Source: Phyllobates terribilis (lineage: Eukaryota). Taken from it: a stretch of DNA of 64,000 nucleotides. The stretch spans positions 16,120,001 through 16,184,000 of the forward strand of contig NW_027362765.1 of the NCBI RefSeq assembly GCF_046119375.1, read 5' to 3'. Positions 1,940 to 63,776 of this stretch are shown one piece after another. The notes below the pieces were generated by a model. It made no database searches. It had not been told where the DNA came from and saw nothing but the letters and a program-made list of their open reading frames with translations. Position numbers and translations under genes: made by a program. Position 1 is the first letter of the stretch; each line of letters opens with the position of its first letter.

Positions 1940-2670
1940 TGCCTATTGAGGACCTATGCTGCCTGTTGGGGACATTTACCTGCCTATTGGGGACATTTAT
2001 TTGCCTATTGGGATTATTTACCTGCCTATTGGGGACCTATGCTGCCTATTTGGGACATTTACCTACCTATTTGGGACATTTACCTGCCTATTGGGGACCT
2101 ATGCTGCCTATTGGGAACATTTACCTGCCTATTGGGGACATTTACTTGCCTATTAGGAATCTATGCTGCCTATTGGGGATATTTACCTGCCTATTGGGGA
2201 CATTTATTTGCCTATTGGGATTATTTACCTGCCTATTGGGGACCTATGCTGCCTATTTGGGACATTTACCTACCTATTTGGGACATTTACCTGCCTATTG
2301 GGGACCTATGCTGCCTATTGGGAACATTTACCTGCCTATTGGGGACATTTACTTGCCTATTAGGAACCTATGCTGCCTATTGGGGATATTTACCTGCCTA
2401 TTGGGGACCTATGCTGCCTATTTGGGACATTTACCTGCCTATTGGGGACATTTACCTGCCTATTGGGGACCTATGCTGCCTATTGGGTACATTTACCTGC
2501 CTATTGGGGACCTATGCTGCCTATTGGGTGCATTTATCTGCCTATTGGGGACATTTACCTGCCTATTGGGGATATTTACCTGCCTATTGAGGACCTATGC
2601 TGCCTATTGGGGACATTTACCTGCCTATTGGGGACCTATGCTGCCTATTGGGTACAGTTACCTACCTATT
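1940..2670. repeat. 21-bp minisatellite B inside the hAT (ggggacatttacctgcctatt variants); second copy ~6850-7335
   Basis: 7-aa periodic ORFs (GDIYLPI / LLGTFTC) in several frames. Confidence 0.88.
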
Positions 2671-5815: not shown

Positions 5816-7857
5816 AGCGCAGAGAGGGACGACGCTGGAGACGCTGGAGTCCGGACCTGAGCAGCGGCAGCAGGCAAGGAGGGAGGTGAGTATTGGATTT
5901 TTTTTTTTTTTTTTTATGTATGGAGGCATGGGACATAATATTAGGGGTGACATCCTGCATGTGGCATTATATGGGGGGGGGGTGACATCCTGAATGGGGC
6001 ATTATATGGGGGGGTGACATGCTGCATGGGGCATTATATGGGGGGTGACATCCAGCATGGGGCATTATATGGGGGGGGGGTGACATCCTGAATGGGGCAT
6101 TATAAAGACAGGGGAGTGATATCCTGCATGGGTCATTATATGGGGGGGGGGGTGACACCCTGAATGGGGCATTATATGGGGGGGGGGTGGCATCCTGAAT
6201 GGGGCATTATAAAGACAGGGGAGTGATATCCTGCATGGGTCATTATATGGGGGGGGGGGTGACATCCTGAATGGGGCATTATATGGGGGGTGACATGCTG
6301 CATTATATGGGGGGGTGACATCCTGCATGGGGCATTATAAAGACAGGGGAGTGATATCCTGCATGGGTCATTACATGGGGGGGGTGACATCCTGAATGGG
6401 GCATTATATGGGGGGGTGACATGCTGCATTATATGGGGGGTGACATCCAGCATGGGGCATTATATGGGGGGGTAACATCCTGAATGGGGCATTATAAAGA
6501 CAGGGAAGTGATATCCTGCATGGGTCACTATATGGGGGGGGGGGTGACATCCTGAATGGGGCATTATATGGGGGGGGGTGACATCCTGAATGGGGCATTA
6601 TAAAGACAGGGGAGTGATATCCTGCATTGGTCATTATATGGGGGGGTGACATCCTGAATGGGGCATTATATGGGGGGTGACATCCTGAATGGGGCATTTT
6701 AAAGACAGGGGAGTGATATCTTGCATGGGGCATTATATGGTGGGAGAAAGGGAAATCCTGCATGGGGCATTATATGGTGGGAGAAAGGGAAATCCTGCAT
6801 GGGGCATAATAAGGGGGGGAACAGCCTGCATAGGGCATTATAAGGGGGAAACAGCCTGCCTATTGAGGACCTATGCTGCCTATTGGGGACATTTACCTGC
6901 CTATTGGGGACATTTACTTGCCTATTGGGGACATTTACCTGCCTATTGGGGACCTATGCTACCTATTTGGGACATTTACCTGCCTATTTGGGACATTTAC
7001 CTGCCTATTGGGGACCTATGCTGCCTATTGGGAACATTTACCTGCCTATTGGGGACATTTACTTGCCTATTAGGAACCTATGCTGCCTATTGGGGATATT
7101 TACCTGCCTATTGGGGACCTATGCTGCCTATTTGGGACATTTACCTGCCTATTGGGGACATTTACCTGCCTATTGGGGACCTATGCTGCCTATTGGGTAC
7201 ATTTACCTGCCTATTGGGGACCTATGCTGCCTACTGGGGACATTTACCTGCCTATTGGGGATATTTACCTGCCTATTGAGGACCTATGCTGCCTATTGGG
7301 GACATTTACCGGACCTATGCTGCCTATTGGGTACAGTTATAAATACAATTGAGCCAAACTCTATGGTAAATCTTAAACATTGTCCTGTATATACAGGGTA
7401 CTCCTACTTAAATACATAACCTATAAAGACATGGAGTATAACCCCCAGAAAGAAGTATGGAGTAGTACTAGATGGTATAAAAATTGAAAGCTTTATTAAA
7501 TACAAATATTAAAATCGAAAAAATATTGAAAGTTAACAGGTCACTAGGGGTGAAAAACACAAAGACAGGGCGGCAATTGTGTACAGAGATACACAAGGGG
7601 TCATCTGGCAACACTTAGTCAGAGATTGTACTCTCATGCATATGTGACTAGCCCCATAAAGTAGGGGGCACACAGATAATAAATCCAAATGACAGTGTAT
7701 ACAGTCAACAGAATACAGGTGGCAAGGAATCCACAAATGTGTAAGTTCAATGACGATTCCAACCCTTCTTACATGCATACAAAGCAAATATGGATAATAT
7801 CTACATCATAACAGATGGCTCACCCATGTGTCAAATAACCTCGTATGCCGCGCTGGG

Positions 7858-7895
7858 GCCCCGACGCGCGTTTCGCATATAGCTTCCTCGGGGGG
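7858..7895 (-). ncRNA. Minimal type I hammerhead-like motif in the PLE pLTR, copy 1
   Basis: CCC-CCGAGGA-A-GC-UAUAU-GC-GAA-ACGCGCGU-C-GGGG: palindromic stem III and a GUC cleavage triplet; U4 is replaced by C. Confidence 0.7.
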
Positions 7896-8535
7896 CTGTG
7901 GTTTTACACGTGGACCGCCATCATTATATACCCCACTTCCCTACCCAACAGGTGTACACGCCGATAATCACGGCGCATGCGCGATGACCTCCGCCCCCTC
8001 CGCCGCGTCACTTCCGGCTAATTCCCAGCGGAAGTGTGGGCGGGAACAATGCGTTCCATTGACGTCAATGGCCCACACTTCCGCCATACGGAAGCCTTAA
8101 GGACGCAGTCGGACGGGGACAAGCTCGCGCATGCGTCACACGGCGGCAGCCATATTGGGTAAGGGAGAAAGGATGGGCAGCCATACATGGGACAGGTAAC
8201 AACGCACCAGGAAGACAATCAACCATAAAACATTGCATAAATAAAGGTTTTCACAATTAATTGCAATATACACAAAATCTACCAAGAAAGTATCATTCCT
8301 TCAGCAAGCGTTATGGTTAACAATATGCAAATATAGATGTCTGAGGAGTCCTCCAGTATGTGTTGTTCACAGATATATGCGAAGAAAGACTTGTCCATAT
8401 ACAATAACAAAGGGCTGATCCCAAATAGTTCCGAGAGGTATTCCAGAAATGAAATAAATGATGACGTAAATGCTAAAAAAGAACAAAAGAATTAAAATCC
8501 ACATAATAAAAACAGAAGGAGAAGGGCATATGGAA

Positions 8536-11500
8536 CTAGAGGTAGGGAGCAAAACTGTTCTGTTCATTTAGACCCCTAGGGGTCATCGTGTCCAGTATAG
8601 CTATCCAGCGACACTCCAGCTGCGCCAAAATGCGTTTGTGATTGCCACCCCTAATCCCGAGGTGTACTCGGTCAATGCCTCTAAATTGGAGGCATACGGG
8701 GTCGCAGTTATGGCACAGTCTGAAGTGTCGCGGGATCGTCTTAAGCAGTGATACATCGGGGGCCTCTCGAGCCGCCAAAACGTCTCTGATGTGTTCCCTT
8801 ACTCGGATCCGAAACTCTCTCGATGTGAGCCCCACATAGCTCTAATTGCACGGACATGTGGCCATATACACAATATATGTGGTACTACAAGAGATATATT
8901 GTGTAATTTTAAAGTTTTTTAGGCCATCTGCAGAAGTAAATGATGTTGTGCGAACTATGTTTCTACAAGCCAGACAGGACCCGCAGGGAAAGCAACCCCA
9001 TCTTTGTTTCCCACCCCCAAATAGGGTGGGGGTGGGAGCGACATAGTGGCTTCTAACTAGCGAGTCCTTTAGACTCTTGCCCCTCCTAGCCGTCATCAAG
9101 GGTTTATCAGGTAAAATTTTGTTCAGTGTAGGTTCAGTTTTGAGGATGGACCAATGTTTGGACAGAATCTCTCGTATTTCCCGCCAACGACTATTATAAG
9201 TAGATATAAATCTAATGGGGGGATCCCTCTCAGGTTGTTTTATGGGATTAATTAGGAGAAGATCCCGTGGAGTTTTCCTAGCACGTTTATAGCCTTTCTT
9301 AATACTACGTGTGCTGTACCCACGATCTCGGAATCTCTGGTCAAGGTCCCGAGCCTGAGCCTCAAATGTTACGTCAGAGAAACAAATGCGTTTCATCCTC
9401 AAATAATGTCCAACAGGAATGGCCCGAATTGTTGAAGGTGTATGGGCTGATGTTGCATGTAACAATGAGTTGACTGCTGTCTCCTTACGATAAACATCAG
9501 TCTCTACCATGCCATTCTGTTGGACAATGATCTTAATGTCCAGAAAGTCAATCTGGTTGTGATCAAACTTATAGGTAAGCCTAATGTTCCTATCGTTAAG
9601 ATTTAAAGAGGCAATGAAGTCATGAAGCTCAGACTCGGGACCCTGCCAGATGATGAAGACATCATCTATATATCTGTACCAGCACTGCACATGGGAGGCG
9701 GCGCCGGCTCCATCCCCGAAAATCTCCCTCTCCCAGAAACTGAGAAAGAGATTAGCGCAGGACGGAGCACACGCCGCGCCCATCGCAGTGCCGCGTTTTT
9801 GAAGGAAGAATCTGTCTTTGAATGTGAAAAAATTATGGGTAAGTATGAAATTCAATAATTCCAAGATCAAGGCACAAAGTGAGGCAGCTAAATCACTGGC
9901 TGCAAGGAAAACTCCACGGCTCGTAGTCCATCCTCATGTCCTATGCTCGTATACAGTGACTCCACGTCAACCGCCACCAAAATCATATCCGTGTCAAGAT
10001 ATAGGCCATCAATCTTCCTAAGGACGTCCCCTGTGTCTCTGACATAGGAGGGCAGCGTTTCAACCAACGGATGGAGGTAATGTTCAATGAATTTACAAAT
10101 AGGATCGCACAGCCCTCCAATGCCAGAGACAATGGGAAGTCCCGGGGGTTCTAGAGGATTCTTGTGAATTTTGGGTAGCAGGTAAAGAGTAGGAACTATT
10201 GGGCACTTAATAAGAAGACCATCAAAGATTTTTTTAGGAATAATTCCCTGCTCATATGCCCGCTCCAAAATGTCAAGAAGTACAGCCGAAAAGGCTGCCA
10301 AAGGATTACTGGATAGAGGAATATAAGTTGTCCGGTCCCGGAGTTGCCTAAAGGCCTCTCTCTCATATTTTGTGACTGGCCAGACCACAACGTTCCCTCC
10401 CTTGTCCGCAGGCTTAAACACCACATCTTTAATAGATTGTAGTTCCCTAAGTGCTTTTCGCTGTCCCGGGGTAAGATTATCATTCCTAAACCTCCCAGAT
10501 AGATTCCTAAGATCATCACTGACAAGTTTGTTAAAGATTTCAACTTGTGGGCAGAGGGAGAAGGGAGGGAAGGTGGTGGATCTGGCCAGGACAGAGGTGG
10601 GAAAAGTACCTGTAGGGACCGGAACACTCTCTCTCTCCAGTTCCTCCAAAGTAGACAAGGCTTCCCTTTCCATAGTCGTGTCCAAATAATCATGACAGGT
10701 AGGTTTGGTGTGCAGTTTCCGCAGAATCACTTTCCTGAGGAATAATTGTAGATCTTTTAACGCTGGGAAAAAATTGTAATTGTTAGTAGGTACAAAGGTT
10801 AGGCCCAACGATAGAACCTCTATCTGATCTTCAGACAGTGTGTGGGTAGAGAGATTGATTACCTCTAGGTTATTAAATTTAGATTTTTTCTCCATGGATT
10901 GTGGTGGGGTTAACTTCCGTTTAGAGTTGCTTTTCCCCTTCCATTGTCCACAGTATCTCTCACCCGACAAATTTACACTGTTCGTGCCAGCCTGATTACT
11001 TTTAGATGGCTCTTCATCCATAGATGACAGGGATGAGACAGAGCTGCCCCGATTCCCCAACACTGACCTTGTAGGACTCTTTTTCCTTCTCCATCTATAG
11101 ACCTGCTTTTGGTTAAAGTCCGAAAGGTCTCTTTGATACTTTCTAGTTTTAGAAGTCACTATGTCTCTCTCCCATTTGAGAAATTCGTTATCCAAGTCCA
11201 AATTGAATTTACTCAGTGCTTCTGGGGTTAATTTAGTAGACAGAGAGTCCTGGAGCTGAGTAATCTCCACCTCAATTATGTGTAGAGACGACTCATTAGA
11301 TTTAATCAGAAGTTCCATATAGCCCCTTGAGCAGGTGGATGATAGGTCCTCCCATTGTTTTTTCAATGCATCGTCATCAAACTCAAATGCTGGAAAAACC
11401 TGGACACGAAGACCCCTAGGGATCAACCCCCTAGCCACATAACGTTCCAAGAAAGCCTTATTCCACCATAGGCGGATTTTTTTTATTATATAGGTCTTTC

Positions 11501-11613
11501 AAATTGGATATCAAGTTGTCATTCTCCCTTGTATTTAAAACCACAGTGGATTCCTCCCCAAAGACCTTATTTAACTGAGTGAGCCATGTCTGCTCACGCT
11601 TTTTGTGATCCAT
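8536..11613 (-). pseudogene. PLE polyprotein (~1025 codons): N-terminal domain, reverse transcriptase, Cys linker, GIY-YIG endonuclease; two homopolymer frameshifts and one stop
   Basis: GTAMG and RYIDD RT motifs; CFPCGSCLAC linker; YIVYMATCPC..YVG..R..EH and ECRWI..L.T..PRGLN. Frameshifts near 11480 and 9905; TAG at 8842-8844. Confidence 0.9.
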
Positions 11614-12177
11614 GTGTTCGGATCCAGAAGCTGTGAAAACACACAGTATTAGCCAAACATAAATACAATTGAGCCGAACTTTATGGTAAATCTTAAACAT
11701 TGTCCTGTATATACAGGGTACTCCTACTTAAATACATAACCTATAAAGACATGGAATATAACCCCCAGAAAGAAGTATGGAGTAGTACTAGATGGTATTA
11801 AAATTGAAAGCTTTATTAAATACAAATATTAAAATCGAAAAAATATTGAAAGTTAACAGGTCACTAGGGGTGAAAAGCACAAAGACAGGGCGGCAATTGT
11901 GTACAGAGATACACAGGGGGTCATCTGGCAACACTTAGTCAGAGATTGTACTCTCATGCATATGTGACTAGCCCCAAAAAGTAGGGGGCACACAGATAAT
12001 AAATCCAAATGACAGTGTATACAGTCAACAGAATACAGGTGGCAAGGAATCCACAAATGTGTAAGTTCAATGACGATTCCAACCCTTCTTACATGCATAC
12101 AAAGCAAATATGGATAATATCTACATCATAACAGATGGCTCACTCATGTGTCAAATAACCTCGTATGCCGCGCTGAG

Positions 12178-12216
12178 GCCCCGACGCACGTTTCGCGTAT
12201 AGCTTCCTCGGGGGGG
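12178..12216 (-). ncRNA. Hammerhead-like motif, PLE copy 2
   Basis: Same motif; stem III reads ACGUGCGU. Confidence 0.65.
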
Positions 12217-12852
12217 CTGTGGTTTTACAAGTGGACCGCCATCATTATATACCCCACTTCCCTACCCTACAGGTGTACACGCCGATAATCACGGCGCATG
12301 CGCGATGACCTCCGCCCCCTCCGCCGCATCATTTCCGGCTAATTCCCAGCGGAAGTGTGGGCGGGAACAATGCGTTCCACTGACGTCAATGGCCCACACT
12401 TCCGCCATACGAAAGCCTTAAGGACGCAGTCGGACGGGGACAATCTCGCGCAAGCGTCACACGGCGGCAGCCATATTGGGTAAGGGAGAAAGGATGGGCA
12501 GCCATACATGGGACAGGTAACAACGCACCAGGAAGACAATCAACCATAAAACATTGCATAAAGGTTTTCACAATTAATTGCAATATACACAAAATCTACC
12601 AAGAAAGTATCATTCCTTCAGCAAGCGTTATGGTTAACAATATGCAAATATAGATGTCTGAGGAGTCCTCCAGTATGTGTTGTTCACAGATATATGCGAA
12701 GAAAGACTTGTCCATATACAATAACAAAGGGCTGATCCCAAATAGGTCCGAGAGGTATTCCAGAAATGAAATAAATGATGACGTAAATGCTAAAAAAGAA
12801 CAAAAGAATTAAAATCCACATAATAAAAACAGAAGGAGAAGGGCATATGGAA

Positions 12853-14847
12853 CTAGAGGTAGGGAGCAAAACTGTTCTGTTCATTTAGACCCCTAGGGGT
12901 CATCGTGTCCAGTATAGCTATCCAGCGACACTCCAGCTGCGCCAAAATGCGTTTGTGATTGCCACCCCTAATCCCGAGGTGTACTCGGTCAATGCCTCTA
13001 AATTGGAGGCATACGGGGTCGCAGTTATGGCACAGCCTGAAGTGTCGCGGGATCGTCTTAAGCAGTGATACATCGGGGGCCTCTCGAGCCGCCAAAACGT
13101 CTCTGATGTGTTCCCTTACTCGGATCCGAAACTCTCTCGATGTGAGTCCCACATAGCTCAACTTGCATGGACATGTGGCCATATACACAATATATGTGAT
13201 ACTACAAGAAATATATTGTGTAATTTTAAAGTTTTTTAGGCCATCTGCAGAAGTAAATGATGTTGTGCGAACTATGTTTCTACAAGCCAGACAGGACCCG
13301 CAGGGAAAGCAACCCCATCTTTGTTTCCCACCCCCAAATAGGGTGGGGGTGGGAGCGACATAGTGGCTTCTAACTAGCGAGTCCTTTAGACTCTTGCCCC
13401 TCCTAGCCGTCATCAAGGGTTTATCAGGTAAAATTTTGTTCAGTGTAGGTTCAGTTTTGAGGATGGACCAATGTTTGGACAGAATCTCTCGTATTTCCCG
13501 CCAACGACTATTATAAGTAGATATAAATCTAATGGGGGGATCCCTCTCAGGTTGTTTTATGGGATTAATTAGGAGAAGATCCCATGGAGTTTTCCTAGCA
13601 CGTTTATAGCCTCTCTTAATACTACGTGTGCTGTACCCACGATCTCGGAATCTCTGGTCAAGGTCCCGAGCCTGAGCCTCAAATGTTACGTCAGAGGAAC
13701 AAATGCGTTTCATCCTCAAATATTGTCCAACAGGAATGGCCCGAATTGTTGAAGGTGTATGGGCTGATGTTGCATGTAACAATGAGTTGACCGCTGTCTC
13801 CTTACGATAAACATCAGTCTCTACCATGCCATTCTGTTGGACAATGATCTTAATGTCCAGAAAGTCAATCTGGTTGTGATCAAACTTATAGGTAAGCCTA
13901 ATGTTCCTATCGTTAAGATTTAAAGAAGCAATGAAGTCATGAAGCTCAGACTCGGGACCCTGCCAGATGATGAAGACATCATCTATATATCTGTACCAGC
14001 ACTGCACATGGGAGGCGGCGCCGGCTCCATCCCCGAAAATCTCCCTCTCCCAGAAACCGAGAAAGAGATTAGCGTAGGACAGAGCACACGCCGCGCCCAT
14101 CGCAGTGCCGCGTTTTTGAAGGAAGAATCTGTCTTTGAATGTGAAAAAATTATGGGTAAGTATGAAATTCAATAATTCCAAGATCAAGGCACAAAGTGAG
14201 GCAGCTAAATCACTGGCTGCAAGGAAAAACTCCACGGCTCGTAGTCCATCCTCATGTCCTATGCTCGTATACAGTGACTCCACGTTAACCGCCACCAAAA
14301 TCATATCCGTGTCAAGATATAGGCCATCAATCTTCCTAAGGACGTCCCCTGTGTCTCTGACATAGGAGGGCAGCGTTTCAACCAACGGATGGAGGTAATG
14401 TTCAATGAATTTACAAATAGGATCGCACAGCCCTCCAATGCCAGAGACAATGGGACGTCCCGGGGGTTCTAGAGGATTCTTGTGAATTTTGGGTAGCAGG
14501 TAAAGAGTAGGAACTATTGGGCACTTAATAAGAAGACCATCAAAGATTTTTTAGGAATAATTCCCTGCTCATATGCCCGCTCCAAAATGTCAAGAAGTAC
14601 AGCCGAAAAGGCTGCCAGAGGATTACTGGATAGAGGAATATAAGTTGTCCAGTCCCGGAGTAGCCTAAAGGCCTCTCTCTCATATTTTGTGACTGGCCAG
14701 ACCACAACGTTCCCTCCCTTGTCCGCAGGCTTAAACACCACATCTTTAATAGATTGTAGTTCCCTAAGTGCTTATCGCTGTCCCGGGGTAAGATTATCAT
14801 TCCTAAACCTCCCAGATAGATTCCTAAGATCATCACTGACAAGTTTG
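12853..14847 (-). pseudogene. PLE copy 2, 5'-truncated RT plus GIY-YIG (510-aa open segment at 12853-14385)
   Basis: The ORF track shows an uninterrupted RT-to-endonuclease frame. Confidence 0.88.
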
Positions 14848-16321
14848 ATTGATGGCCTATATCTTGACACGGATATGATTTTGGTGGCGGTTGACGTGGA
14901 GTCACTGTATACGAGCATAGGACATGAGGATGGACTACGAGCCGTGGAGTTTTTCCCTGCAGCCAGTGATTTAGCTGCCTCACTTTGTGCCTTGATCTTG
15001 AAATTATTGAATTTCATACTTACCCATAATTTTTTCACATTCAAAGACAGATTCTTCCTTCAAAAACGCGGCACTGCGATGGGCGCGGCGTGTGCTCTGT
15101 CCTACGCTAATCTCTTTCTCGGTTTCTGGGAGAGGGAGATTTTCGGGGATGGAGCCGGCGCCGCCTCCCATGTGCAGTGCTGGTACAGATATATAGATGA
15201 TGTCTTCATCATCTGGCAGGGTCCCGAGTCTGAGCTTCATGACTTCATTGCCTCTTTAAATCTTAACGATAGGAACATTAGGCTTACCTATAAGTTTGAT
15301 CACAACCAGATTGACTTTCTGGACATTAAGATCATTGTCCAACAGAATGGCATGGTAGAGACTGATGTTTATCGTAAGGAGACAGCGGTCAACTCATTTT
15401 TACATGCAACATCAGCCCATACACCTTCAACAATTCGGGCCATTCCTGTTGGACAATATTTGAGGATGAAACGGTTCCTCTGACGTAACATTTGAGGCTC
15501 AGGCTCGGGACCTTGACCAGAGATTCCGAGATCGTGGGTACAGCACACGTAGTATTAAGAGAGGCTATAAACGTGCTAGGAAAACTCCACGGGATCTTCT
15601 CCTAATTAATCCCATAAAACAACCTGAGAGGGATCCCCCCATTAGATTTATATCTACTTATAATAGTCGTTGGCGGGAAATACGAGAGATTCTGTCCAAA
15701 CATTGGTCCATCCTCAAAACTGAACCTACACTGAACAAAATTTTACCTGATAAACCCTTGATGACGGCTAGGAGGGGCAAGAGTCTAAAGGACTCGCTAG
15801 TTAGAAGCCACTATGTCGCTCCCACCCCCACCCTATTTGGGGGTGGGAAACAAAGATGGGGTTGCTTTCCCTGCGGGTCCTGTCTGGCTTGTAGAAACAT
15901 AGTTCGCACAACATCATTTACTTCTGCAGATGGCCTAAAAAACTTTAAAATTACACAATATATTTCTTGTAGTACCACATATATTGTGTATATGGCCACA
16001 TGTCCGTGCAATTTGAGCTATGTGGGACTCACATCGAGAGAGTTTCGGATCCGAGTCAGGGAACACATCAGAGACGTTTTGGCGGCTCGAGAGGCCCCCG
16101 ATGTATCACTGCTTAAGACGATCCCGCGACACTTCAGACTGTGCCATAACTGCGACCCCGTATGCCTCCAATTTAGAGGCATTGACCGAGTACACCTCGG
16201 GATTAGGGGTGGCAATCACAAACGCATTTTGGCGCAGCTGGAGTGTCGCTGGATAGCTATACTGGACACGATGACCCCTAGGGGTCTAAATGAACAGAAC
16301 AGTTTTGCTCCCTACCTCTAG
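14848..16321 (+). pseudogene. PLE copy 3 (inverted), RT plus GIY-YIG with a small deletion near 15470
   Basis: ORFs 14689-15483 and 15758-16321 match copies 1 and 2 on the opposite strand. Confidence 0.88.
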
Positions 16322-16699
16322 TTCCATATGCCCTTCTCCTTCTGTTTTTATTATGTGGATTTTAATTCTTTTGTTCTTTTTTAGCATTTACGTCATCATT
16401 TATTTCATTTCTGGAATACCTCTCGGACCTATTTGGGATCAGCCCTTTGTTATTGTATATGGACAAGTCTTTCATCGCATATATCTGTGAACAACACATA
16501 TTGGAGGACTCCTCAGACATCTATATTTGCATATTGTTAACCATAACGCTTGCTGAAGGAATGATACTTTCTTGGTAGATTTTGTGTATATTGCAATTAA
16601 TTGTGAAAACCTTTATTTATGCAATGTTTTATGGTTGATTGTCTTCCTGGTGCGTTGTTACCTGTCCCATGTATGGCTGCCCATCCTTTCTCCCTTACC

Positions 16700-16925
16700 C
16701 AATATGGCTGCCGCCGTGTGACGCATGCGCGAGATTGTCCCCGTCCGACTGCGTCCTTAAGGCTTCCGTATGGCGGAAGTGTGGGCCATTGACGTCAGTG
16801 GAACGCATTGTTCCCGCCCACACTTCCGCTGGGAATTAGCCGGAAATGACGCGGCGGAGGTCATCGCGCATGCGCCGTGACTATCGGCGTGTACACCTGT
16901 AGGGTAGGGAAGTGGGGTATATAAT
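16700..16925 (+). promoter_or_regulatory. CpG-rich Pol II promoter in the PLE pLTR (mirrored on the minus strand at ~7925-8160 and ~12245-12480)
   Basis: YY1-like aatatggctgcc (16701), NRF1-like cgcatgcgc (16722 and 16867), inverted ETS cggaagtg / cacttccg (16774, 16821), CRE tgacgtca (16790) and TATATAA (16918-16924). Confidence 0.55.
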
Positions 16926-16952
16926 GATGGCGGTCCACGTGTAAAACCACAG

Positions 16953-16990
16953 CCCCCCGAGGAAGCTATATGCGAGACGCGCGTCGGGGC
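16953..16990 (+). ncRNA. Hammerhead-like motif, PLE copy 3 (GAAA mutated to GAGA, likely inactive)
   Basis: cccgaggaagctatatgcgagacgcgcgtcgggg. Confidence 0.55.
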
Positions 16991-17473
16991 CTCAGCGCGG
17001 CATATGAGGTTATTTAACACATGGGTGAGCCATCTGTTATGATGTAGATATTATCCATATTTGCTTTGTATGCATGTAAGAAGGGTTGGAATCGTCATTG
17101 AACTTACACATTTGTGGATTCCTTCCCACCTGTATTCTGTTGACTGTATACACTGTCATTTGGATTTATTATCTGTGTGCCCCCTACTTTATGGGGCTAG
17201 TCACATATGCATGAGAGTACAATCTCTGACTAAGTGTTGCCAGATGACCCCCTGTGTATCTCTGTACACAATTGCCGCTCTGTCTTTGTGTTTTTCACCC
17301 CTAGTGACCTGTTAACTTTCAATATTCTTTCAATTTTAATATTTGTATTTAATAAAGCTTTCAATTTTAATACCATTTAGTACTACTCCATACTTCTTTT
17401 TGGGGGTTATACTCCATGTCTTTATAGGTTATCTATTGGGTACAGTTACCTACCTATTGAAATACCGGTTGAT

Positions 17474-21830: not shown

Positions 21831-21860
21831 GGGTCAGGAGGGGTTTACAGTGTGGATGTA

Positions 21861-32424: not shown

Positions 32425-33465
32425 CTGCCAAGAATAAAACAAATTATTATTTCTTAATAAAATATCATCGAATTATATATTTTTAAACATTTCTACTTAA
32501 ACTGTAAAAATGGCAAATTATGTAAAAATATTGAATTATTCACCAAGAAAATAACAGTTCACAGTCTAATCGAAGACCTCATAGCAAGAACCAGTAGAGC
32601 ATGGTGTTCAACTGTTTGTTCATTCTGCCTCCCAAATATGGAATATAAAGTTAAACATTGTTATGTAGGCAAAAATAATACCAATAAAAACTTCTCATCT
32701 AAGAAAAAACAAGTCTCTACTCAGATACATCATCTGTCAGTGGAAAAACAGAGGTTTTCACATTATTAGTGGCTCAAAGACTCTTGAAAAGCAACTTTGT
32801 TTATAAAAACCAATCCAGCAAAATTCACTCTCCTAAAGTCAAATTTCCCCCTCGCTTCTGAGCCTTACAATGTGCCCAAACCACATTTAGCCTCCATGTA
32901 TTTGGGATTACTATATTGAAAAGTTCCAACTTAATTTACGGTGTGTGTGTATCCTGGAGCATAATCTGGGCACTATGTGTTGGGCAATAAAATCAGACCG
33001 GTATCCAAAGGGTAACATTTCACCTTAAGCATGCCAAGGTGAGGAGACTTTTATGCCACAATGCTCTTCTAGGAAATATGCAAATTGTGTCTTCAGAGAA
33101 GAAGAGGACTAGAACTCTAGTGCCACCTTTAGGAAGTAGCAATCCTAAAAGTCAATATCTTCCCTTTAACGAACCTTGTCATATGACTTGGGGTCGATAT
33201 TGACTTTTAGGAAAAAATGGCATATTTGTAATTTTCTCTTTGCAACATCCACTGCGTGCTAATTTACAGAAAGTGACTGTGGAGTCAAAATAGTAACAAC
33301 TTCTAAAGATTAATTCATTGAGGGTTATAATTTCCAAAATGTAGTCACTATATGGGGATTTCTACTGCTCTGATTTTCTGACATTTTTTCATATTAGGGC
33401 TTCTACAAATGGTGTGTCCCATCTCCTCTAAACAGCATATAGTAGTGTTCAAAAACATGAGTTAA

Positions 33466-55688: not shown

Positions 55689-55940
55689 ATAGTATTTAAG
55701 GTTGAAGGAAGGCTAAGTCCATCTAGTTCAACCCATAGCCTAACAGGTTGATCCAGAGGAAGGCAAAAAAACCAATGTGGCAAACGCTAAGCTCCACATT
55801 GGGGAAAAAATTCCTTCCTGACTCCACATACGGCAATCAGACTAGTTCCCCGGATCAACGCCCCCATCAAGGAATCTAGTATATGTAACCTGTAATATTA
55901 TATTTTCAAGAAAGGCATCCAGGCCCTTCTTAAATTTTAG
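55689..55940 (-). mobile_element. CR1 LINE 3' end (last ORF2 codons and 3' UTR)
   Basis: Reverse complement reads LKFKKGLDAFLE, continuing the frame from 61891. Confidence 0.8.
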
Positions 55941-58900
55941 ACAATGTGAACTGAGGTCTAAGATGGCAGACATACAAGAAACAGAGGCATGTTCACACTA
56001 GCAAAAAAGAAGCAAGACAAAAATATATCTCATACCCTACCATAATTATATATAAATGTAAAGCAAAGTTGCATAATAAATATAGGGTACTTAGTGAACT
56101 ATTTTTGATCAAAAAAAGTATACAAGCCGTCCCACCAGTGGCAAGGTGACCCTAAATTGGGACGGTACCTATACTGCCTATATTAAAAACCTTACTGTAT
56201 ATCAAAGTTGAAGTAATGCATATAAAAGGGTAGACAAATAGGACCGGGTCCCAACTCCAGACCACCTAGGCCCGTGGTAAGCTACATATATACCAATCAG
56301 CTCAACAAAGGGCATGCCACACCCTTAAATTGCACAGAATGCAAACAAGTCAAAAAACCAGACAATGTGAACTGAGGTCTAAGATGGCAGACATACAAGA
56401 AACAGAGGCATGTTCACACTAGCAAAAAAGAAGCAAGACAAAAATATATCTCATACCCTACCATAATTATATATAAATGTAAAGCAAAGTTGCATAATAA
56501 ATATAGGGTACTTAGTGAACTATTTTTGATCAAAAAAAGTATACAAGCCGTCCCACCAGCGGCAAGGTGACCCTAAATTGGGACGGTACCTATACTGCCT
56601 ATATTAAAAACCTTACTGTATATCAAAGTTGAAGTAATGCATATAAAAGGGTAGACAAATAGGACCGGGTCCCAACTCCAGACCACCTAGGCCCGTGGTA
56701 AGCTACATATATACCAATCAGCTCAACAAAGGGCATGCCACACCCTTAAATTGCACAGAATGCAAACAAGTCAAAAAACCAGACAATGTGAACTGAGGTC
56801 TAAGATGGCAGACATACAAGAAACAGAGGCATGTTCACACTAGCAAAAAAGAAGCAAGACAAAAATATATCTCATACCCTACCATAATTATATATAAATG
56901 TAAAGCAAAGTTGCATAATAAATATAGGGTACTTAGTGAACTATTTTTGATCAAAAAAAGTATACAAGCCGTCCCACCAGCGGCAAGGTGACCCTAAATT
57001 GGGACGGTACCTATACTGCCTATATTAAAAACCTTACTGTATATCAAAGTTGAAGTAATGCATATAAAAGGGTAGACAAATAGGACCGGGTCCCAACTCC
57101 AGACCACCTAGGCCCGTGGTAAGCTACATATATACCAATCAGCTCAACAAAGGGCATGCCACACCCTTAAATTGCACAGAATGCAAACAAGTCAAAAAAC
57201 CAGACAATGTGAACTGAGGTCTAAGATGGCAGACATACAAGAAACAGAGGCATGTTCACACTAGCAAAAAAGAAGCAAGACAAAAATATATCTCATACCC
57301 TACCATAATTATATATAAATGTAAAGCAAAGTTGCATAATAAATATAGGGTACTTAGTGAACTATTTTTGATCAAAAAAAGTATACAAGCCGTCCCACCA
57401 GCGGCAAGGTGACCCTAAATTGGGACGGTACCTATACTGCCTATATTAAAAACCTTACTGTATATCAAAGTTGAAGTAATGCATATAAAAGGGTAGACAA
57501 ATAGGACCGGGTCCCAACTCCAGACCACCTAGGCCCGTGGTAAGCTACATATATACCAATCAGCTCAACAAAGGGCATGCCACACCCTTAAATTGCACAG
57601 AATGCAAACAAGTCAAAAAACCAGACAATGTGAACTGAGGTCTAAGATGGCAGACATACAAGAAACAGAGGCATGTTCACACTAGCAAAAAAGAAGCAAG
57701 ACAAAAATATATCTCATACCCTACCATAATTATATATAAATGTAAAGCAAAGTTGCATAATAAATATAGGGTACTTAGTGAACTATTTTTGATCAAAAAA
57801 AGTATACAAGCCGTCCCACCAGCGGCAAGGTGACCCTAAATTGGGACGGTACCTATACTGCCTATATTAAAAACCTTACTGTATATCAAAGTTGAAGTAA
57901 TGCATATAAAAGGGTAGACAAATAGGACCGGGTCCCAACTCCAGACCACCTAGGCCCGTGGTAAGCTACATATATACCAATCAGCTCAACAAAGGGCATG
58001 CCACACCCTTAAATTGCACAGAATGCAAACAAGTCAAAAAACCAGACAATGTGAACTGAGGTCTAAGATGGCAGACATACAAGAAACAGAGGCATGTTCA
58101 CACTAGCAAAAAAGAAGCAAGACAAAAATATATCTCATACCCTACCATAATTATATATAAATGTAAAGCAAAGTTGCATAATAAATATAGGGTACTTAGT
58201 GAACTATTTTTGATCAAAAAAAGTATACAAGCCGTCCCACCAGCGGCAAGGTGACCCTAAATTGGGACGGTACCTATACTGCCTATATTAAAAACCTTAC
58301 TGTATATCAAAGTTGAAGTAATGCATATAAAAGGGTAGACAAATAGGACCGGGTCCCAACTCCAGACCACCTAGGCCCGTGGTAAGCTACATATATACCA
58401 ATCAGCTCAACAAAGGGCATGCCACACCCTTAAATTGCACAGAATGCAAACAAGTCAAAAAACCAGACAATGTGAACTGAGGTCTAAGATGGCAGACATA
58501 CAAGAAACAGAGGCATGTTCACACTAGCAAAAAAGAAGCAAGACAAAAATATATCTCATACCCTACCATAATTATATATAAATGTAAAGCAAAGTTGCAT
58601 AATAAATATAGGGTACTTAGTGAACTATTTTTGATCAAAAAAAGTATACAAGCCGTCCCACCAGCGGCAAGGTGACCCTAAATTGGGACGGTACCTATAC
58701 TGCCTATATTAAAAACCTTACTGTATATCAAAGTTGAAGTAATGCATATAAAAGGGTAGACAAATAGGACCGGGTCCCAACTCCAGACCACCTAGGCCCG
58801 TGGTAAGCTACATATATACCAATCAGCTCAACAAAGGGCATGCCACACCCTTAAATTGCACAGAATGCAAACAAGTCAAAAAACCAGACAATGTGAACTG

Positions 58901-61876
58901 AGGTCTAAGATGGCAGACATACAAGAAACAGAGGCATGTTCACACTAGCAAAAAAGAAGCAAGACAAAAATATATCTCATACCCCACCATAATTATATAT
59001 AAATGTAAAGCAAAATTGCATAATAAATATAGGGTACTTAGTGAACTATTTTTGATCAAAAAAAGTATACAAGCCGTCCCACCAGCGGCAAGGTGACCCT
59101 AAATTGGGACGGTACCTATACTGCCTATATTAAAAACCTTACTGTATATCAAACCTTAAAGGTTTTTAATATAGGCAGTATAGGTACCGTCCCAATTTAG
59201 GGTCACCTTGCCGCTGGTGGGACGGCTTGTATACTTTTTTTGATCAAAAATAGTTCACTAAGTACCCTATATTTATTATGCAACTTTGCTTTACATTTAT
59301 ATATAATTATGGTAGGGTATGAGATATATTTTTGTCTTGCTTCTTTTTTGCTAGTGTGAACATGCCTCTGTTTCTTGTATGTCTGCCATCTTAGACCTCA
59401 GTTCACATTGTCTGGTTTTTTGACTTGTTTGCATTCTGTGCAATTTAAGGGTGTGGCATGCCCTTTGTTGAGCTGATTGGTATATATGTAGCTTACCACG
59501 GGCCTAGGTGGTCTGGAGTTGGGACCCGGTCCTATTTGTCTACCCTTTTATATGCATTACTTCAACTTTGATATACAGTAAGGTTTTTAATATAGGCAGT
59601 ATAGGTACCGTCCCAATTTAGGGTCACCTTGCCGCTGGTGGGACGGCTTGTATACTTTTTTTGATCAAAAATAGTTCACTAAGTACCCTATATTTATTAT
59701 GCAACTTTGCTTTACATTTATATATAATTATGGTAGGGTATGAGATATATTTTTGTCTTGCTTCTTTTTTGCTAGTGTGAACATGCCTCTGTTTCTTGTA
59801 TGTCTGCCATCTTAGACCTCAGTTCACATTGTCTGGTTTTTTGACTTGTTTGCATTCTGTGCAATTTAAGGGTGTGGCATGCCCTTTGTTGAGCTGATTG
59901 GTATATATGTAGCTTACCACGGGCCTAGGTGGTCTGGAGTTGGGACCCGGTCCTATTTGTCTACCCTTTTATATGCATTACTTCAACTTTGATATACAGT
60001 AAGGTTTTTAATATAGGCAGTATAGGTACCGTCCCAATTTAGGGTCACCTTGCCGCTGGTGGGACGGCTTGTATACTTTTTTTGATCAAAAATAGTTCAC
60101 TAAGTACCCTATATTTATTATGCAACTTTGCTTTACATTTATATATAATTATGGTAGGGTATGAGATATATTTTTGTCTTGCTTCTTTTTTGCTAGTGTG
60201 AACATGCCTCTGTTTCTTGTATGTCTGCCATCTTAGACCTCAGTTCACATTGTCTGGTTTTTTGACTTGTTTGCATTCTGTGCAATTTAAGGGTGTGGCA
60301 TGCCCTTTGTTGAGCTGATTGGTATATATGTAGCTTACCACGGGCCTAGGTGGTCTGGAGTTGGGACCCGGTCCTATTTGTCTACCCTTTTATATGCATT
60401 ACTTCAACTTTGATATACAGTAAGGTTTTTAATATAGGCAGTATAGGTACCGTCCCAATTTAGGGTCACCTTGCCGCTGGTGGGACGGCTTGTATACTTT
60501 TTTTGATCAAAAATAGTTCACTAAGTACCCTATATTTATTATGCAACTTTGCTTTACATTTATATATAATTATGGTAGGGTATGAGATATATTTTTGTCT
60601 TGCTTCTTTTTTGCTAGTGTGAACATGCCTCTGTTTCTTGTATGTCTGCCATCTTAGACCTCAGTTCACATTGTCTGGTTTTTTGACTTGTTTGCATTCT
60701 GTGCAATTTAAGGGTGTGGCATGCCCTTTGTTGAGCTGATTGGTATATATGTAGCTTACCACGGGCCTAGGTGGTCTGGAGTTGGGACCCGGTCCTATTT
60801 GTCTACCCTTTTATATGCATTACTTCAACTTTGATATACAGTAAGGTTTTTAATATAGGCAGTATAGGTACCGTCCCAATTTAGGGTCACCTTGCCGCTG
60901 GTGGGACGGCTTGTATACTTTTTTTGATCAAAAATAGTTCACTAAGTACCCTATATTTATTATGCAACTTTGCTTTACATTTATATATAATTATGGTAGG
61001 GTATGAGATATATTTTTGTCTTGCTTCTTTTTTGCTAGTGTGAACATGCCTCTGTTTCTTGTATGTCTGCCATCTTAGACCTCAGTTCACATTGTCTGGT
61101 TTTTTGACTTGTTTGCATTCTGTGCAATTTAAGGGTGTGGCATGCCCTTTGTTGAGCTGATTGGTATATATGTAGCTTACCACGGGCCTAGGTGGTCTGG
61201 AGTTGGGACCCGGTCCTATTTGTCTACCCTTTTATATGCATTACTTCAACTTTGATATACAGTAAGGTTTTTAATATAGGCAGTATAGGTACCGTCCCAA
61301 TTTAGGGTCACCTTGCCGCTGGTGGGACGGCTTGTATACTTTTTTTGATCAAAAATAGTTCACTAAGTACCCTATATTTATTATGCAACTTTGCTTTACA
61401 TTTATATATAATTATGGTAGGGTATGAGATATACTTTTGTCTTGCTTCTTTTTTGCTAGTGTGAACATGCCTCTGTTTCTTGTATGTCTGCCATCTTAGA
61501 CCTCAGTTCACATTGTCTGGTTTTTTGACTTGTTTGCATTCTGTGCAATTTAAGGGTGTGGCATGCCCTTTGTTGAGCTGATTGGTATATATGTAGCTTA
61601 CCACGGGCCTAGGTGGTCTGGAGTTGGGACCCGGTCCTATTTGTCTACCCTTTTATATGCATTACTTCAACTTTGATATACAGTAAGGTTTTTAATATAG
61701 ACAGTATAGGTACCGTCCCAATTTAGGGTCACCTTGCCGCTGGTGGGACGGCTTGTATACTTTTTTTGATCAAAAATAGTTCACTAAGTACCCTATATTT
61801 ATTATGCAACTTTGCTTTACATTTATATATAATTATGGTAGGGTATGAGATATATTTTTGTCTTGCTTCTTTTTTG
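55941..61876. repeat. 421-bp tandem array arranged as a giant inverted repeat (7.6 copies then 6.5 inverted copies), inserted with a TSD
   Basis: Unit starts at 55941, 56362, 56783, 57204, 57625, 58046, 58467 and 58888; inversion at 59141-59158; cttcttaaattttag at 55926-55940 and 61877-61891. Confidence 0.95.
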
Positions 61877-63776
61877 CTTCTTAAATTTTAGTAGTGAATC
61901 ACTCATTACAACATCATGCGGCAGAGAGTTCCATAGCCTCACTGTTCTTACAGTGAAGAATCGGCGTCTAAGATCATGATTAAACCTTCTTTCCTCCAGA
62001 CGTAGAAGATGCCCCCTTGTCACAGTCTCAGAGTAAAGATCAGTAGAAAGGTTTTTGTACTGTCCCCTCATATATTTGTACATAGTAATAAGATCACCCT
62101 AAGCCTTTGTTTTTCCAAACGAAATAACCCCAAGTGTAATAACCTGTCTTGGCATTGCCGACCCCCATTCCTCTAATAACCTTGGTCGCTCTTCTCTGCA
62201 CCCGCTCTAGTTCAGCTATGTCTTTCTTATACACCGGAGACCAGAAATGTACACAGTATACTAAGTGCGGTCGCACTAGTGACTTGTATAGAGGTAAAAT
62301 TATGTTCTCCTCATGAGCATCTATGCCTCTTTTAATGCATCCCATTATGTTATTTGCATTTGCAGCAGCTGCCTGACACTAGCCACCAAAGGTGAGCTTG
62401 TCGTCCACCAATACACCCAGGTCTTTTTCAGTTACAGTTTTGTCCAGTGCTTTACAATTAAGCACATAATTATACATTTTATTTCCTCTGCCCAAGTGCA
62501 TTACCTTACATTTATCCCCATTAAAGCTCATTTGCCATTTATCAGCCCAAGCTTCTAGTTTACATAGATCCTCCTGTAATATAAAATTGTCCTTCTCTGT
62601 ATTGATTACCCTGCAGAGTTTAGTGTCATCTCCAAATATTGAAATATTACTCTGTATGCCCCCTACAAGGTCATTAATAAATATGTTAGAAAGAAGCGGG
62701 ACCAATACTGACCCTTGTGGTACCCCACTGTTAACTGTGACCCAGTCTGAGTATGTTCCATTAATAACCACCCTTTGTTTCCGATCACTGAGCCAGTTCT
62801 TAACCCACTTGCATATATTTTCCCCTATCCCCATTGTTCTCATTTTATGTATCAACCTTTTCTGTGGAACCGTATCAAAAGCTTTTGAAAAGTCCATATA
62901 CACAACATCCACTGCATTTCCTTGATCCAGTCCGGAACTTACCACTTCATAAAAGCTGATCAGATTAGTTTGACAGGAACGGTCCCTCGTAAACCCATGT
63001 TGATATTGGGTCATGAGGTTATTCTTCTTCAGATACTCTAGTATAGCATCTCTTAGGAAACCCTCCAGGATTTTACTCACAGTAGAGGTTAAGATTACTG
63101 GCCTATAATTTCTAAGTTCAGCGTTTGTCCCCTTTTTGAATATTGGCACCACATTGCTATACGCCAGTCCTGTGGTACAGACCCTGTTATTATGGAATCT
63201 TTAAAGATTAATAATAATGGTCTATCTATGACGTTACTTAATTCCTTCAGTACTCGCGGGTGTATCCCATCCGGGCCCGGGGATTTGTCAACTTTAGTGA
63301 TTTTTAGACGCCGCCGTACTTCCTGCTGGGTTAAGCAAGTGACATTTAATGGAGAATTTTTGTCACCACTGATCATGTTTTCTGTCATGTGACTTTCTTT
63401 TGTAAATACTGTTGAAAAAAAAACCATTTAGCATATTGGCTTTTTCCTCATCCTCATCCACCATTTCACCCAGACTATTTTTAAGGGGGCCAACACTATC
63501 AGTTTTTAGTTTCTTACTATTTATGTAATTAAAGAATATTTTGGGATTATTTTTACTTTCTTTGGCAATGAGTCTCTCAGCCTCAATCTTTGCTGCCTTG
63601 ATTTGGTTTTTACAGAATTTATTTAATTTTCTGTATTTATTTAATGCGTCATCACTACCTACTTGCTTTAGTTCTCTAAATGCTTTCTTTTTGTCACTTA
63701 TTGCACCCCTTACAGCTCTATTTAGCCATAGTGGTTTCCTCCTATTTCTAGCATGTTTATTCCCATAGGGTATATA
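61877..63776 (-). mobile_element. CR1 LINE ORF2 (RT), degraded; cut at its 5' side by a Tc1
   Basis: SPGPDGIHPRVLKEL, NYRPVILTS, DFSKAFD, GVPQGSVL, FGDDTKL and LWNSLP motifs. Confidence 0.92.

What the first reader, a model, noticed from the sequence alone, without database searches (positions are those of the whole stretch)
55926..61891. A 421-bp non-coding unit inserted in one step as a 14-copy palindromic concatemer with a 15-bp TSD
Seen: about 14 units, differing at only a few positions, sit inside the last codons of a CR1 ORF2. The frame LKFKK|GLDAFLE resumes across the array, and cttcttaaattttag is duplicated on both sides (its outer 2 bp on each side also match the unit). The first 7.6 units point one way and the last 6.5 the other. 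No long ORF. Inference: a long TSD around a whole array points to staggered-cut, target-primed insertion of an already multimeric template (concatemeric or circular RNA), not slow unequal crossing-over. This would be a mobile element that makes instant palindromic satellites.
Basis: partly seen in the sequence, partly recalled or inferred. Interest (0 to 1): 0.92.

Follow-up and report, generated by a model that had tools for sequence, protein, structure and literature searches.

The report
Head-to-head 421-bp array, Penelope-style insertion
A 5.9-kb block of fourteen near-identical 421-bp non-coding units, half pointing each way and bracketed by a 15-bp target duplication inside an old CR1 element, has the tandem-plus-inverted shape that Penelope-like retrotransposons leave, so it is a clean new example of a known process, not a new kind of mobile element.

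Summary
There are 7.64 units of 421 bp at 55939-59153 and 6.46 inverted units at 59159-61878. An exact 15-nt duplication (55926-55940, 61877-61891) flanks them. Removing the array and one duplicate restores the CR1 ORF2 tail, and a frog CR1 homologue reads the same motif without interruption.

Opposite-facing ends inside one duplication mean the inversion arose at insertion, so target-primed reverse transcription (TPRT) is the best fit. It is not a new kind of element. An autonomous Penelope-like element (PLE) in this same window (7340-17432) has the same architecture:
- 1.74 tandem copies plus an inverted 5'-truncated copy, joined head-to-head
- a 16-bp duplication, confirmed by a paralogous empty site at 2645-2660
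- 3' ends that differ by 76 nt (60 nt in the array)
- equal private substitutions in all three copies, which indicates a single event

Published biochemistry shows that a PLE protein nicks and extends both DNA strands from two internal RNA start sites.

The unit has no hammerhead, no Rfam match and no similarity to the neighbouring PLE, so its partner enzyme is inferred from architecture only. A circular RNA template is unproven. All five substitutions lie in end units of the arms, which leaves in-situ turnover or assembly polishing open.

The parts
55926..55940 (.). Left copy of the 15-nt target-site duplication CTTCTTAAATTTTAG. The last 2 nt (AG) also match unit positions 1-2.
55941..59153 (-). 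Left arm: 7.64 units of 421 bp. The + strand is the A-rich strand, and the inferred RNA sense strand is the minus strand. It starts at unit position 3 next to the duplication and ends at unit position 268 at the centre.
   Evidence: Sense is inferred by analogy with the head-to-head PLE complex.
55941..56000 (-). 60-nt 'tail', present at the outer end of the left arm only. It folds as one stem-loop with a 10-bp closing stem, and the two inferred reverse-transcription start sites lie at its two feet.
59154..59158 (.). Centre junction: 5-nt filler CCTTA. With its neighbours it forms the local palindrome AAACCTT-A-AAGGTTT. The arms are offset by 13 nt (unit position 268 versus 255), giving an 18-nt unpaired spacer.
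59159..61876 (+). Right arm: 6.46 inverted units (the + strand is the U/T-rich inferred sense strand). It runs from unit position 255 at the centre to unit position 63 next to the duplication.
61877..61891 (.). Right copy of the 15-nt target-site duplication. The first 2 nt (CT) also match the unit.
61892..63427 (-). Host CR1 ORF2 upstream of the insertion: decayed reverse-transcriptase domain and C-terminal region, ending ...LKFKK at the duplication.
   Evidence: (RVT_1 E=5.7e-31)
55845..55925 (-). Host CR1 ORF2, last 27 codons (GLDAFLENIIL...PGN*), downstream of the insertion.
7340..14846 (-). Comparator in the same window: an autonomous Penelope-like element with 1.74 tandem units (period about 4320 bp). 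[quoted passage not shown]
14847..17432 (+). Comparator: inverted 5'-truncated copy of the same PLE, joined head-to-head. Its 3' end stops 76 nt short of the other arm's 3' end.
7324..7339 (.). Comparator: left copy of the 16-bp target duplication CTATTGGGTACAGTTA of the PLE complex. The right copy is at 17433-17448.
2645..2660 (.). Comparator: paralogous empty site. It holds one copy of CTATTGGGTACAGTTA with matching flanks on both sides.

Best explanation
The array is the product of one retro-insertion of Penelope-like (PLE) type. A reverse transcriptase with an endonuclease nicked both strands of an AT-rich site in a CR1 element, 11-15 bp apart. Each exposed 3'-OH primed copying of the same U-rich RNA made of 421-nt units. 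Synthesis started at two sites 60 nt apart, at the feet of one stem-loop, and ran 3.2 kb on one strand and 2.7 kb on the other. The two cDNA ends were then joined head-to-head by end joining, leaving a 5-nt templated filler.

The 421-bp unit is a non-coding, non-autonomous element copied in trans. It carries no hammerhead ribozyme (tested; see evidence). The many copies come from a multi-unit (or possibly circular) template or from repeated template jumps, and were largely present at birth.

Shown: the architecture, the duplication, the restored host frame, and a PLE complex of the same shape in the same window. Inferred: which enzyme did it, which strand is the RNA, the nature of the template, and that all 14 units date from the insertion.
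For: - The two ends of the insert face opposite ways inside one exact 15-nt duplication. An inversion arising later inside an array would leave both ends in the same orientation.
- The PLE complex at 7340-17432 in this window has the same topology: tandem copies plus an inverted 5'-truncated copy, head-to-head, with a 16-bp duplication. A paralogous empty site at 2645-2660 confirms that duplication.
- The PLE's three copies carry 18, 17 and 16 private substitutions in 2,581 bp, a star tree, which indicates one event.
- The two 3' ends are offset by 76 nt in the PLE and by 60 nt in the array. This matches the PLE 'tail'.
- Arm lengths are in the same range: 3.2 and 2.7 kb for the array, 7.5 and 2.6 kb for the PLE.
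- The ORFs are PLE-type. The nearest Atlas cluster has RVT_1, GIY-YIG and HTH_animal (score 0.97). Frog homologues carry PF00078 and PF01541 and some are named GIY-YIG domain-containing. DKG and IVY-x3-CPC-x3-YVG motifs are present.
- Literature: an Anolis PLE protein nicks and extends both strands, starts reverse transcription at two internal sites, the tail is the sequence between them, the template holds multiple copies, and targets are AT-rich (PMC11167929). Partial tandems, an inverted 5'-truncated copy and a tail are typical of PLEs, and non-autonomous relatives give multicopy head-to-tail insertions (PMC8557442). Head-to-head is the commonest arrangement and mobilisation in trans is documented (PMC3846280).
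- The centre has a 13-nt offset plus a 5-nt filler, and the nearby variants are not mirrored. That fits end joining and does not fit a fold-back read.
- The inferred sense strand folds better than shuffles (z = -3.3).
Against: - The unit shows no sequence similarity to the non-coding regions of the neighbouring PLE.
- It has no hammerhead. The sense strand contains no GAAA at all, and Rfam finds nothing at E<=10.
- The tail is 60 nt, against the published 30-40 nt.
- Both junctions show 2-nt microhomology (AG primer ends against CU in the RNA). The neighbouring PLE shows 0-1 nt, and the Anolis enzyme starts at non-homologous sites.
- All five substitutions lie in end units of the arms and the 11 inner units are identical. 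That pattern is not expected for an array left untouched since a one-step birth.
- No second locus of this family could be examined.
Confidence: 0.55

Rival explanations
1. The same kind of head-to-head retro-insertion happened, but it was small (about 1-2 units per arm). Each arm then grew and was homogenised in place by unequal crossing-over or gene conversion.
For: - All five substitutions are in end units of the arms and the inner 11 units are identical. Edge units typically escape homogenisation in arrays.
- One variant is a CpG-to-TpG change, typical of ageing in the genome.
- The recent retrozyme preprint assumes local amplification by unequal crossover (bioRxiv 10.64898/2026.07.22.740005).
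Against: - The inner-unit consensus of the two arms is identical, although the arms would have expanded separately. Taking the edge-unit mutation density as the rate, about 3 fixed differences between the arms would be expected (my estimate).
- The arms have similar lengths, within the cDNA-length range of the neighbouring one-event PLE complex.
- No length variants or indels occur in any unit.
Confidence: 0.15
2. A LINE of the CR1, L1 or Tx1 type mobilised a long satellite transcript in trans, and classical twin priming created the inversion.
For: - The 15-bp duplication is in the LINE range.
- Both junctions show 2-nt microhomology, and the centre junction fits microhomology-mediated joining.
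- LINE reverse-transcriptase ORFs are present in the window.
Against: - Neither end has poly(A) or a microsatellite tail.
- The unit shows no similarity to any LINE 3' end in the window.
- It would need a 5.9-kb satellite transcript of 14 near-identical units.
- Multicopy tandem-plus-inverted products with a one-sided tail are described for PLEs, not for LINEs (PMC8557442, PMC11167929).
Confidence: 0.15
3. The interior of the array is an assembly product. The copy number and the place of the orientation switch come from collapsed or fold-back long reads, and inner units were polished to a consensus.
For: - The 11 inner units are identical and variants occur only where reads can be anchored.
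- PLE-type tandem/inverted structures are known to trouble assemblies (PMC8557442, PMC3846280).
Against: - Both outer junctions carry the same duplication and restore the CR1 frame, so the opposite-facing ends, and hence at least one switch, are real.
- The centre is not a perfect mirror: 13-nt offset, 5-nt filler, and two variants 138-168 bp from the centre with no counterpart in the other arm.
- The nearby PLE complex has the same shape, with diverged and therefore unambiguous arms.
Confidence: 0.08
4. The event was DNA-level: rolling-circle or extrachromosomal circular satellite DNA was captured at a staggered double-strand break, or a DNA transposon carried an internal satellite.
For: - The units are near-identical, as a rolling-circle copy of one monomer would be.
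- First-stage notes in this genome, unchecked, report satellites riding in DNA transposons.
Against: - There are no terminal inverted repeats. The ends fall at unit positions 3 and 63 and are not symmetric.
- From general knowledge, 11-15 bp is longer than the duplications of known cut-and-paste superfamilies.
- Break capture does not normally create a duplication.
- A single linear concatemer would not give two opposed arms.
Confidence: 0.07

Closest known systems
Penelope-like element (PLE) insertion complexes and their non-autonomous derivatives (for example MRC1 of the Chlamys group in Chlamydomonas; pLTR-mediated mobilisation in trans in Adineta vaga)
   Same: - Head-to-tail multicopy insertion, an adjacent inverted copy joined head-to-head, a duplication of variable length, and a one-sided terminal extension ('tail').
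- AT-rich target.
- Priming from both strands fits the Anolis PLE biochemistry (PMC11167929).
- A PLE of the same shape, with a 16-bp duplication, lies 40 kb away in the same window.
   Different: - No similarity to that PLE's ends, and no ORF remnant.
- 14 short units, where PLE complexes have 1-2 long ones.
- The tail is 60 nt, not 30-40 nt.
- Both junctions show 2-nt microhomology.
Metazoan non-LTR retrozymes (tandem 150-450-bp units with a type I hammerhead; newt satellite 2 type)
   Same: - Unit size (421 bp), low GC (about 38%), non-coding, tandem, and a duplication longer than 4 bp.
- Occurs in an amphibian genome rich in PLEs.
- Retrozymes are proposed to be non-autonomous PLE derivatives (bioRxiv 10.64898/2026.07.22.740005).
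   Different: - No hammerhead on either strand.
- Circular RNA was not tested.
- The palindromic two-arm arrangement is not mentioned in the retrozyme paper I searched for it (PMC7229834: no occurrence of 'inverted').
L1-type twin priming (5' inversion of LINE, SVA or Alu insertions)
   Same: One duplication around two opposed segments of the same RNA, with the 5' ends meeting at an internal junction that shows microhomology or filler.
   Different: No poly(A), no LINE tail, and a tandem multi-unit template. In LINEs the second priming is a by-product. For the one PLE protein tested in vitro (Anolis, PMC11167929), extension of both strands appears to be a regular activity of the enzyme.

Membership tests
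PLE-type insertion complex (autonomous or non-autonomous) | Head-to-tail (partial or multiple) tandem copies made at insertion | tested here: met
   7.64 and 6.46 in-register units with no indels. Whether all date from the insertion is inferred.
PLE-type insertion complex (autonomous or non-autonomous) | Adjacent inverted 5'-truncated copy, joined head-to-head | tested here: inconclusive
   Two opposed arms are present. Head-to-head versus tail-to-tail cannot be read without an ORF or RNA data. It is inferred from target-primed logic and from the neighbouring PLE.
PLE-type insertion complex (autonomous or non-autonomous) | Target-site duplication of variable length around the whole complex | tested here: met
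   15 nt (11-15 allowing for microhomology). The neighbouring PLE has 16 bp, with an empty site to confirm it.
PLE-type insertion complex (autonomous or non-autonomous) | Terminal 'tail': extra sequence at one end, lying between two internal reverse-transcription start sites | tested here: met
   The left arm extends 60 nt further than the right (unit position 3 versus 63). The neighbouring PLE shows 76 nt. Published tails are 30-40 nt (PMC8557442, PMC11167929).
PLE-type insertion complex (autonomous or non-autonomous) | Sequence shared with an autonomous PLE (pLTR, 3' end or reverse-transcriptase binding region) | tested here: not met
   No similarity to the only PLE available, at 7340-17432. 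Other PLE families of the genome could not be searched.
Non-LTR retrozyme | Type I hammerhead ribozyme in every unit | tested here: not met
   Rfam finds nothing at E<=10 on 1.5 kb. There is no CUGANGA...GAAA motif. The sense strand has no GAAA, and the antisense CUGAGG...GAAAC is non-canonical.
Non-LTR retrozyme | Tandem non-coding units of 150-450 bp, GC below 50%, duplication longer than 4 bp | tested here: met
Non-LTR retrozyme | Unit-length circular RNA | not testable with these tools
   No transcript data are available.
LINE-mediated insertion with twin priming | Poly(A) or LINE-specific 3' tail next to one duplication copy | tested here: not met
   The ends read ...CACATTGT(CT) and ...CTTTTTTG(CT). 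There is no match to LINE 3' ends in the window.
HDV-like self-cleaving ribozyme (as claimed for similar-sized units elsewhere in this genome) | Nested double pseudoknot (P1, P1.1, P2, P3, P4) with a catalytic C in J4/2 | tested here: inconclusive
   A descriptor written after I had seen the candidate finds one hit per sense unit (for example 59610-59689) and hits 0.3% of shuffles. No Rfam HDV-family match was found even on 131 nt. P4 is weak, the first pair is G1-C rather than G.U, and J4/2 is over-long.
Terminal-inverted-repeat DNA transposon carrying a satellite | Terminal inverted repeats at the insert ends and a family-specific short duplication | tested here: not met
   The ends lie at different unit positions (3 and 63) and are not inverted copies of each other. 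The duplication is 11-15 bp.

The most novel reading that the evidence does not exclude
A ribozyme-bearing or ribozyme-free 421-nt RNA, possibly circular, is copied by rolling-circle reverse transcription from both nicked target strands by a Penelope-like enzyme. A palindromic 14-unit satellite is then born in one event. The candidate HDV-like fold on the sense strand would make this a delta-type retrozyme, a class I found no description of in the held paper library (one targeted search).
Probability: 0.12. Interest if true: 0.75.

Novelty: new member of a known kind. Interest (0 to 1): 0.38.

Why it matters
How tandem arrays of retrozyme-like units arise is still open. The 2026 preprint on vertebrate retrozymes assumes local growth by unequal crossover after insertion. 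This window puts two things side by side: an autonomous PLE whose tandem and inverted copies date from one event (equal branch lengths, duplication verified by an empty site), and a young non-coding array of the same shape with kilobase-long arms. Together they argue that PLE-type reverse transcription can seed a multi-unit, two-armed satellite in one step. They also give exact coordinates (start sites, centre, duplication) that a genome-wide survey or an in vitro assay can test. The case does not define a new class of element.

Tried and rejected
- Rfam gave nothing on the whole window at gathering threshold, nothing at E<=10 on 1.5 kb of array and on the PLE untranslated region, and only noise on a 131-nt segment.
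- tRNA scan of the array: none.
- Hammerhead motif scans of the unit and of the PLE: none credible.
- A strict HDV-like descriptor gave 0 hits. A relaxed one gave only AU/GU-rich noise. A tailored descriptor gave one candidate, kept as a lead only.
- BLAST of the unit against the rest of the window found no other copy. BLAST of the CR1 flanks found no paralogue at DNA level.
- Local alignment of the unit against the PLE non-coding regions was no better than shuffles.
- Two exact-match scans of metagenome contigs for 22-24-mers of the unit, in the hope of host contamination, found nothing.
- PDB sequence search with the PLE ORF found nothing. Pfam found only a weak RVT_1 match.
- The Rana temporaria tandem-repeat paper was searched for a 421-bp family: none.
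- Explanations considered and rejected: DNA transposon (no terminal inverted repeats), Helitron or tyrosine-recombinase elements (which make no duplication, from general knowledge), and a later inversion inside a one-way array (which cannot turn a terminal unit at the exact duplication boundary).
Full report
**1. What is there**

Tandem Repeats Finder reports two abutting arrays of one 421-bp unit: 55939-59153 (7.6 copies) and 59159-61878 (6.5 copies), 99% matches and no indels. The AT-skew changes sign at about 59.15 kb, so the second array is the reverse complement of the first.

I put every unit in register. The left arm runs from unit position 3 (position 1 if the 2-nt overlap is counted) to position 268. 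The right arm runs from position 255 back to position 63 (or 61). Only five substitutions exist in 5,935 bp, all transitions. The 11 inner full units are identical to the consensus.

The 15-mer CTTCTTAAATTTTAG flanks the block at 55926-55940 and 61877-61891. It occurs nowhere else in the window, where 0.01 matches are expected by chance. Deleting the block and one copy restores a single minus-strand frame...SLLKFKKGLDAFLENIIL...PGN*, in a decayed CR1 ORF2. A CR1-tail protein from Eleutherodactylus coqui reads ...IEEFKRGLDVFLERKD... without interruption, which supports that reading of the empty site. There is no ORF of 50 aa or more inside the block, no tRNA, no Rfam family and no other copy of the unit in the window.

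**2. What the geometry forces**

The two ends of the insert face opposite ways, and each abuts a copy of the same duplication. An inversion arising later within a one-way array would leave both terminal units in the original orientation. So the two-armed state dates from the insertion (inference).

Both outer junctions restore the host frame. At least one orientation switch is therefore real, whatever the assembler did inside.

The centre is not a mirror fold. The left arm overshoots by 13 nt and a 5-nt filler CCTTA follows, forming the local palindrome AAACCTT-A-AAGGTTT. Two variants 138-168 bp from the centre have no counterpart in the other arm. This looks like end joining with a short templated insertion. 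It does not look like a fold-back read.

**3. The comparator in the same window**

ORFs at 8842-11450 and 12853-14385 (minus strand) carry the DKG motif, reverse-transcriptase motifs and IVY-MAT-CPC-KLS-YVG...R..EH. This is a GIY-YIG endonuclease with two cysteines between GIY and YIG, which PMC8557442 gives as the PLE diagnostic. Pfam sees only a weak RVT_1 match. The nearest Atlas cluster carries RVT_1, GIY-YIG and HTH_animal (score 0.97). Frog homologues (best 66% identity, dendrobatids) carry PF00078 and PF01541.

This PLE forms a complex:
- 1.74 tandem units of about 4320 bp on the minus strand (7340-14846), then an inverted 5'-truncated copy on the plus strand (14847-17432). The 5' ends meet at the centre and the 3' ends lie outside.
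- It is flanked by CTATTGGGTACAGTTA at 7324-7339 and 17433-17448.
- A paralogous copy of the host (a satellite-plus-Tc1 composite) at 2400-2760 carries that 16-mer once, with matching flanks on both sides. This is an empty site, so the 16-bp duplication is genuine.
- The inverted copy's 3' end stops 76 nt short of the other arm's 3' end.
- Over the 2,581 bp shared by all three copies, private substitutions number 18, 17 and 16. Branch lengths are equal, as expected if all three copies were made in one event.

**4. Matching the array to that pattern and to the literature**

The array shares five features with the PLE complex: tandem copies, opposed arms, one duplication (15 versus 16 bp), outer ends offset by tens of nucleotides (60 versus 76), and kilobase-scale arms (3.2 and 2.7 kb versus 7.5 and 2.6 kb).

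Published descriptions fit:
- PLE insertions are partial tandems, often with an inverted 5'-truncated copy and a 30-40-bp tail at one end. Non-autonomous relatives give multicopy head-to-tail insertions (PMC8557442).
- Head-to-head is the commonest arrangement, duplications are 8-10 bp in a rotifer, and mobilisation in trans through pLTRs occurs (PMC3846280).
- A purified Anolis PLE protein nicks and extends both DNA strands, starts reverse transcription at two internal RNA sites, and the tail is the sequence between them. It prefers AT-rich targets and probably uses multi-copy RNA (PMC11167929).

In the array the 60-nt offset segment folds as one stem-loop with a 10-bp closing stem, and the two inferred start sites sit at its two feet. 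The duplication is 80% A+T. By analogy the RNA is the U-rich strand (minus in the left arm, plus in the right). That strand also folds better than shuffles (z = -3.3, against -1.9 for the other strand).

**5. What does not fit or remains open**

- The unit shows no similarity to the neighbouring PLE's non-coding regions, so the enzyme partner is inferred from architecture alone.
- There is no hammerhead on either strand, so the unit is not a retrozyme as defined.
- Both junctions show 2-nt microhomology (primer ends AG against CU in the RNA). The neighbouring PLE shows 0-1 nt, and the Anolis enzyme starts without homology.
- All five substitutions lie in end units of the arms, four within 200 bp of an arm end. 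Under a uniform model this has a probability of about 0.002, though the test was chosen after seeing the data. It could mean in-situ homogenisation, polishing of multi-mapping reads, or chance.
- Private substitutions are 0.08% per bp in the array against 0.66% in the PLE copies. The array is either roughly eight times younger or it has been homogenised.
- The template (long array transcript, circle, or repeated template jumps) cannot be told from sequence.

**6. A lead I could not settle**

First-stage notes on other windows of this genome, all unchecked, claim HDV-like folds in 431- and 459-nt tandem units with 13-bp duplications. I therefore looked for such a fold here.
- A strict descriptor found nothing.
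- A relaxed one found only AU/GU-rich noise.
- A descriptor with the general HDV topology, written after I had seen a candidate, hits once per sense-strand unit, for example at 59610-59689: P1 GUCCCA/UGGGAC, P2 UAGGG/CCCUA, P3 UCA/UGG, L3 CCUUGCCGC, P1.1 CC/GG. It does not hit the antisense strand, and it hits 0.3% of shuffles.

Against the candidate: no Rfam HDV-family model matches, even on 131 nt at E<=10. P4 is weak. The first pair is G-C rather than G.U, and J4/2 would be about 10 nt. I rate it at about 10-15%.

**7. Verdict**

The feature is real. The best reading (0.55) is a single PLE-type, dual-strand target-primed insertion of a non-autonomous 421-nt unit that was multi-copy from birth.

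Rivals:
- a small head-to-head insertion that later grew in place (0.15)
- LINE twin priming of a satellite transcript (0.15)
- an interior produced by the assembly (0.08)
- DNA-level capture (0.07)

This is a new member of a known kind. Its value is as a dated, coordinate-exact natural example, next to its autonomous analogue, bearing on whether retrozyme-like arrays are born multi-unit.

The host is an anuran. Its nearest protein matches are to other frogs at 66-67% identity. The species was not identified.

Noticed in passing
window 7324-17448, with the empty-site paralogue at 2645-2660: An autonomous Penelope-like element inserted as 1.74 tandem units plus an inverted 5'-truncated copy, with a 16-bp target duplication. 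The empty site is preserved in a paralogous satellite-plus-Tc1 composite 5 kb away. The three copies carry equal private substitutions (18, 17, 16), which indicates one event.
   Followed up: yes
window 1250-3837 and 5926-7339 + 17433-18727: Two paralogous composites, each made of a 36-bp G-rich satellite, a 20/41-bp satellite (CCTGCCTATTGGGGACATTTA) and a Tc1/mariner transposase ORF. The satellites appear to travel with, or next to, the Tc1 element.
   Followed up: partly
window 59610-59689 (+), and the same place in every unit: Candidate HDV-like nested fold on the U-rich strand of the 421-bp unit. It is found only by a descriptor written after seeing it (0.3% of shuffles) and not by Rfam. 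It echoes unchecked first-stage claims of delta-type ribozymes in 431/459-nt tandem units elsewhere in this genome.
   Followed up: partly
window 56139, 58985, 59015, and the last two units of the right arm (61098-61876): All five substitutions of the array lie in end units of the arms, and the 11 inner units are identical. This could be homogenisation, read polishing or chance.
   Followed up: partly
window 21860-24055: A 73-copy array of a 30-bp GC-rich unit (AGCGGAGCCGCGCGTGTACGAGGTGTACGG), open in all six reading frames over about 3 kb.
   Followed up: no
window 31067-32431 (-): A long exon encoding about 11 tandem C2H2 zinc fingers (Pfam zf-C2H2, zf-H2C2_2).
   Followed up: no
window 49522-53224 (-): A LINE with an apurinic-endonuclease-like N-terminus (MVKVLSWNIRGL...) and an RVT_1 domain. 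The ORFs are long and split into pieces.
   Followed up: no
window 27023-27947: 2.4 copies of a 389-bp AT-rich tandem unit at 77% identity. Its nature was not examined.
   Followed up: no
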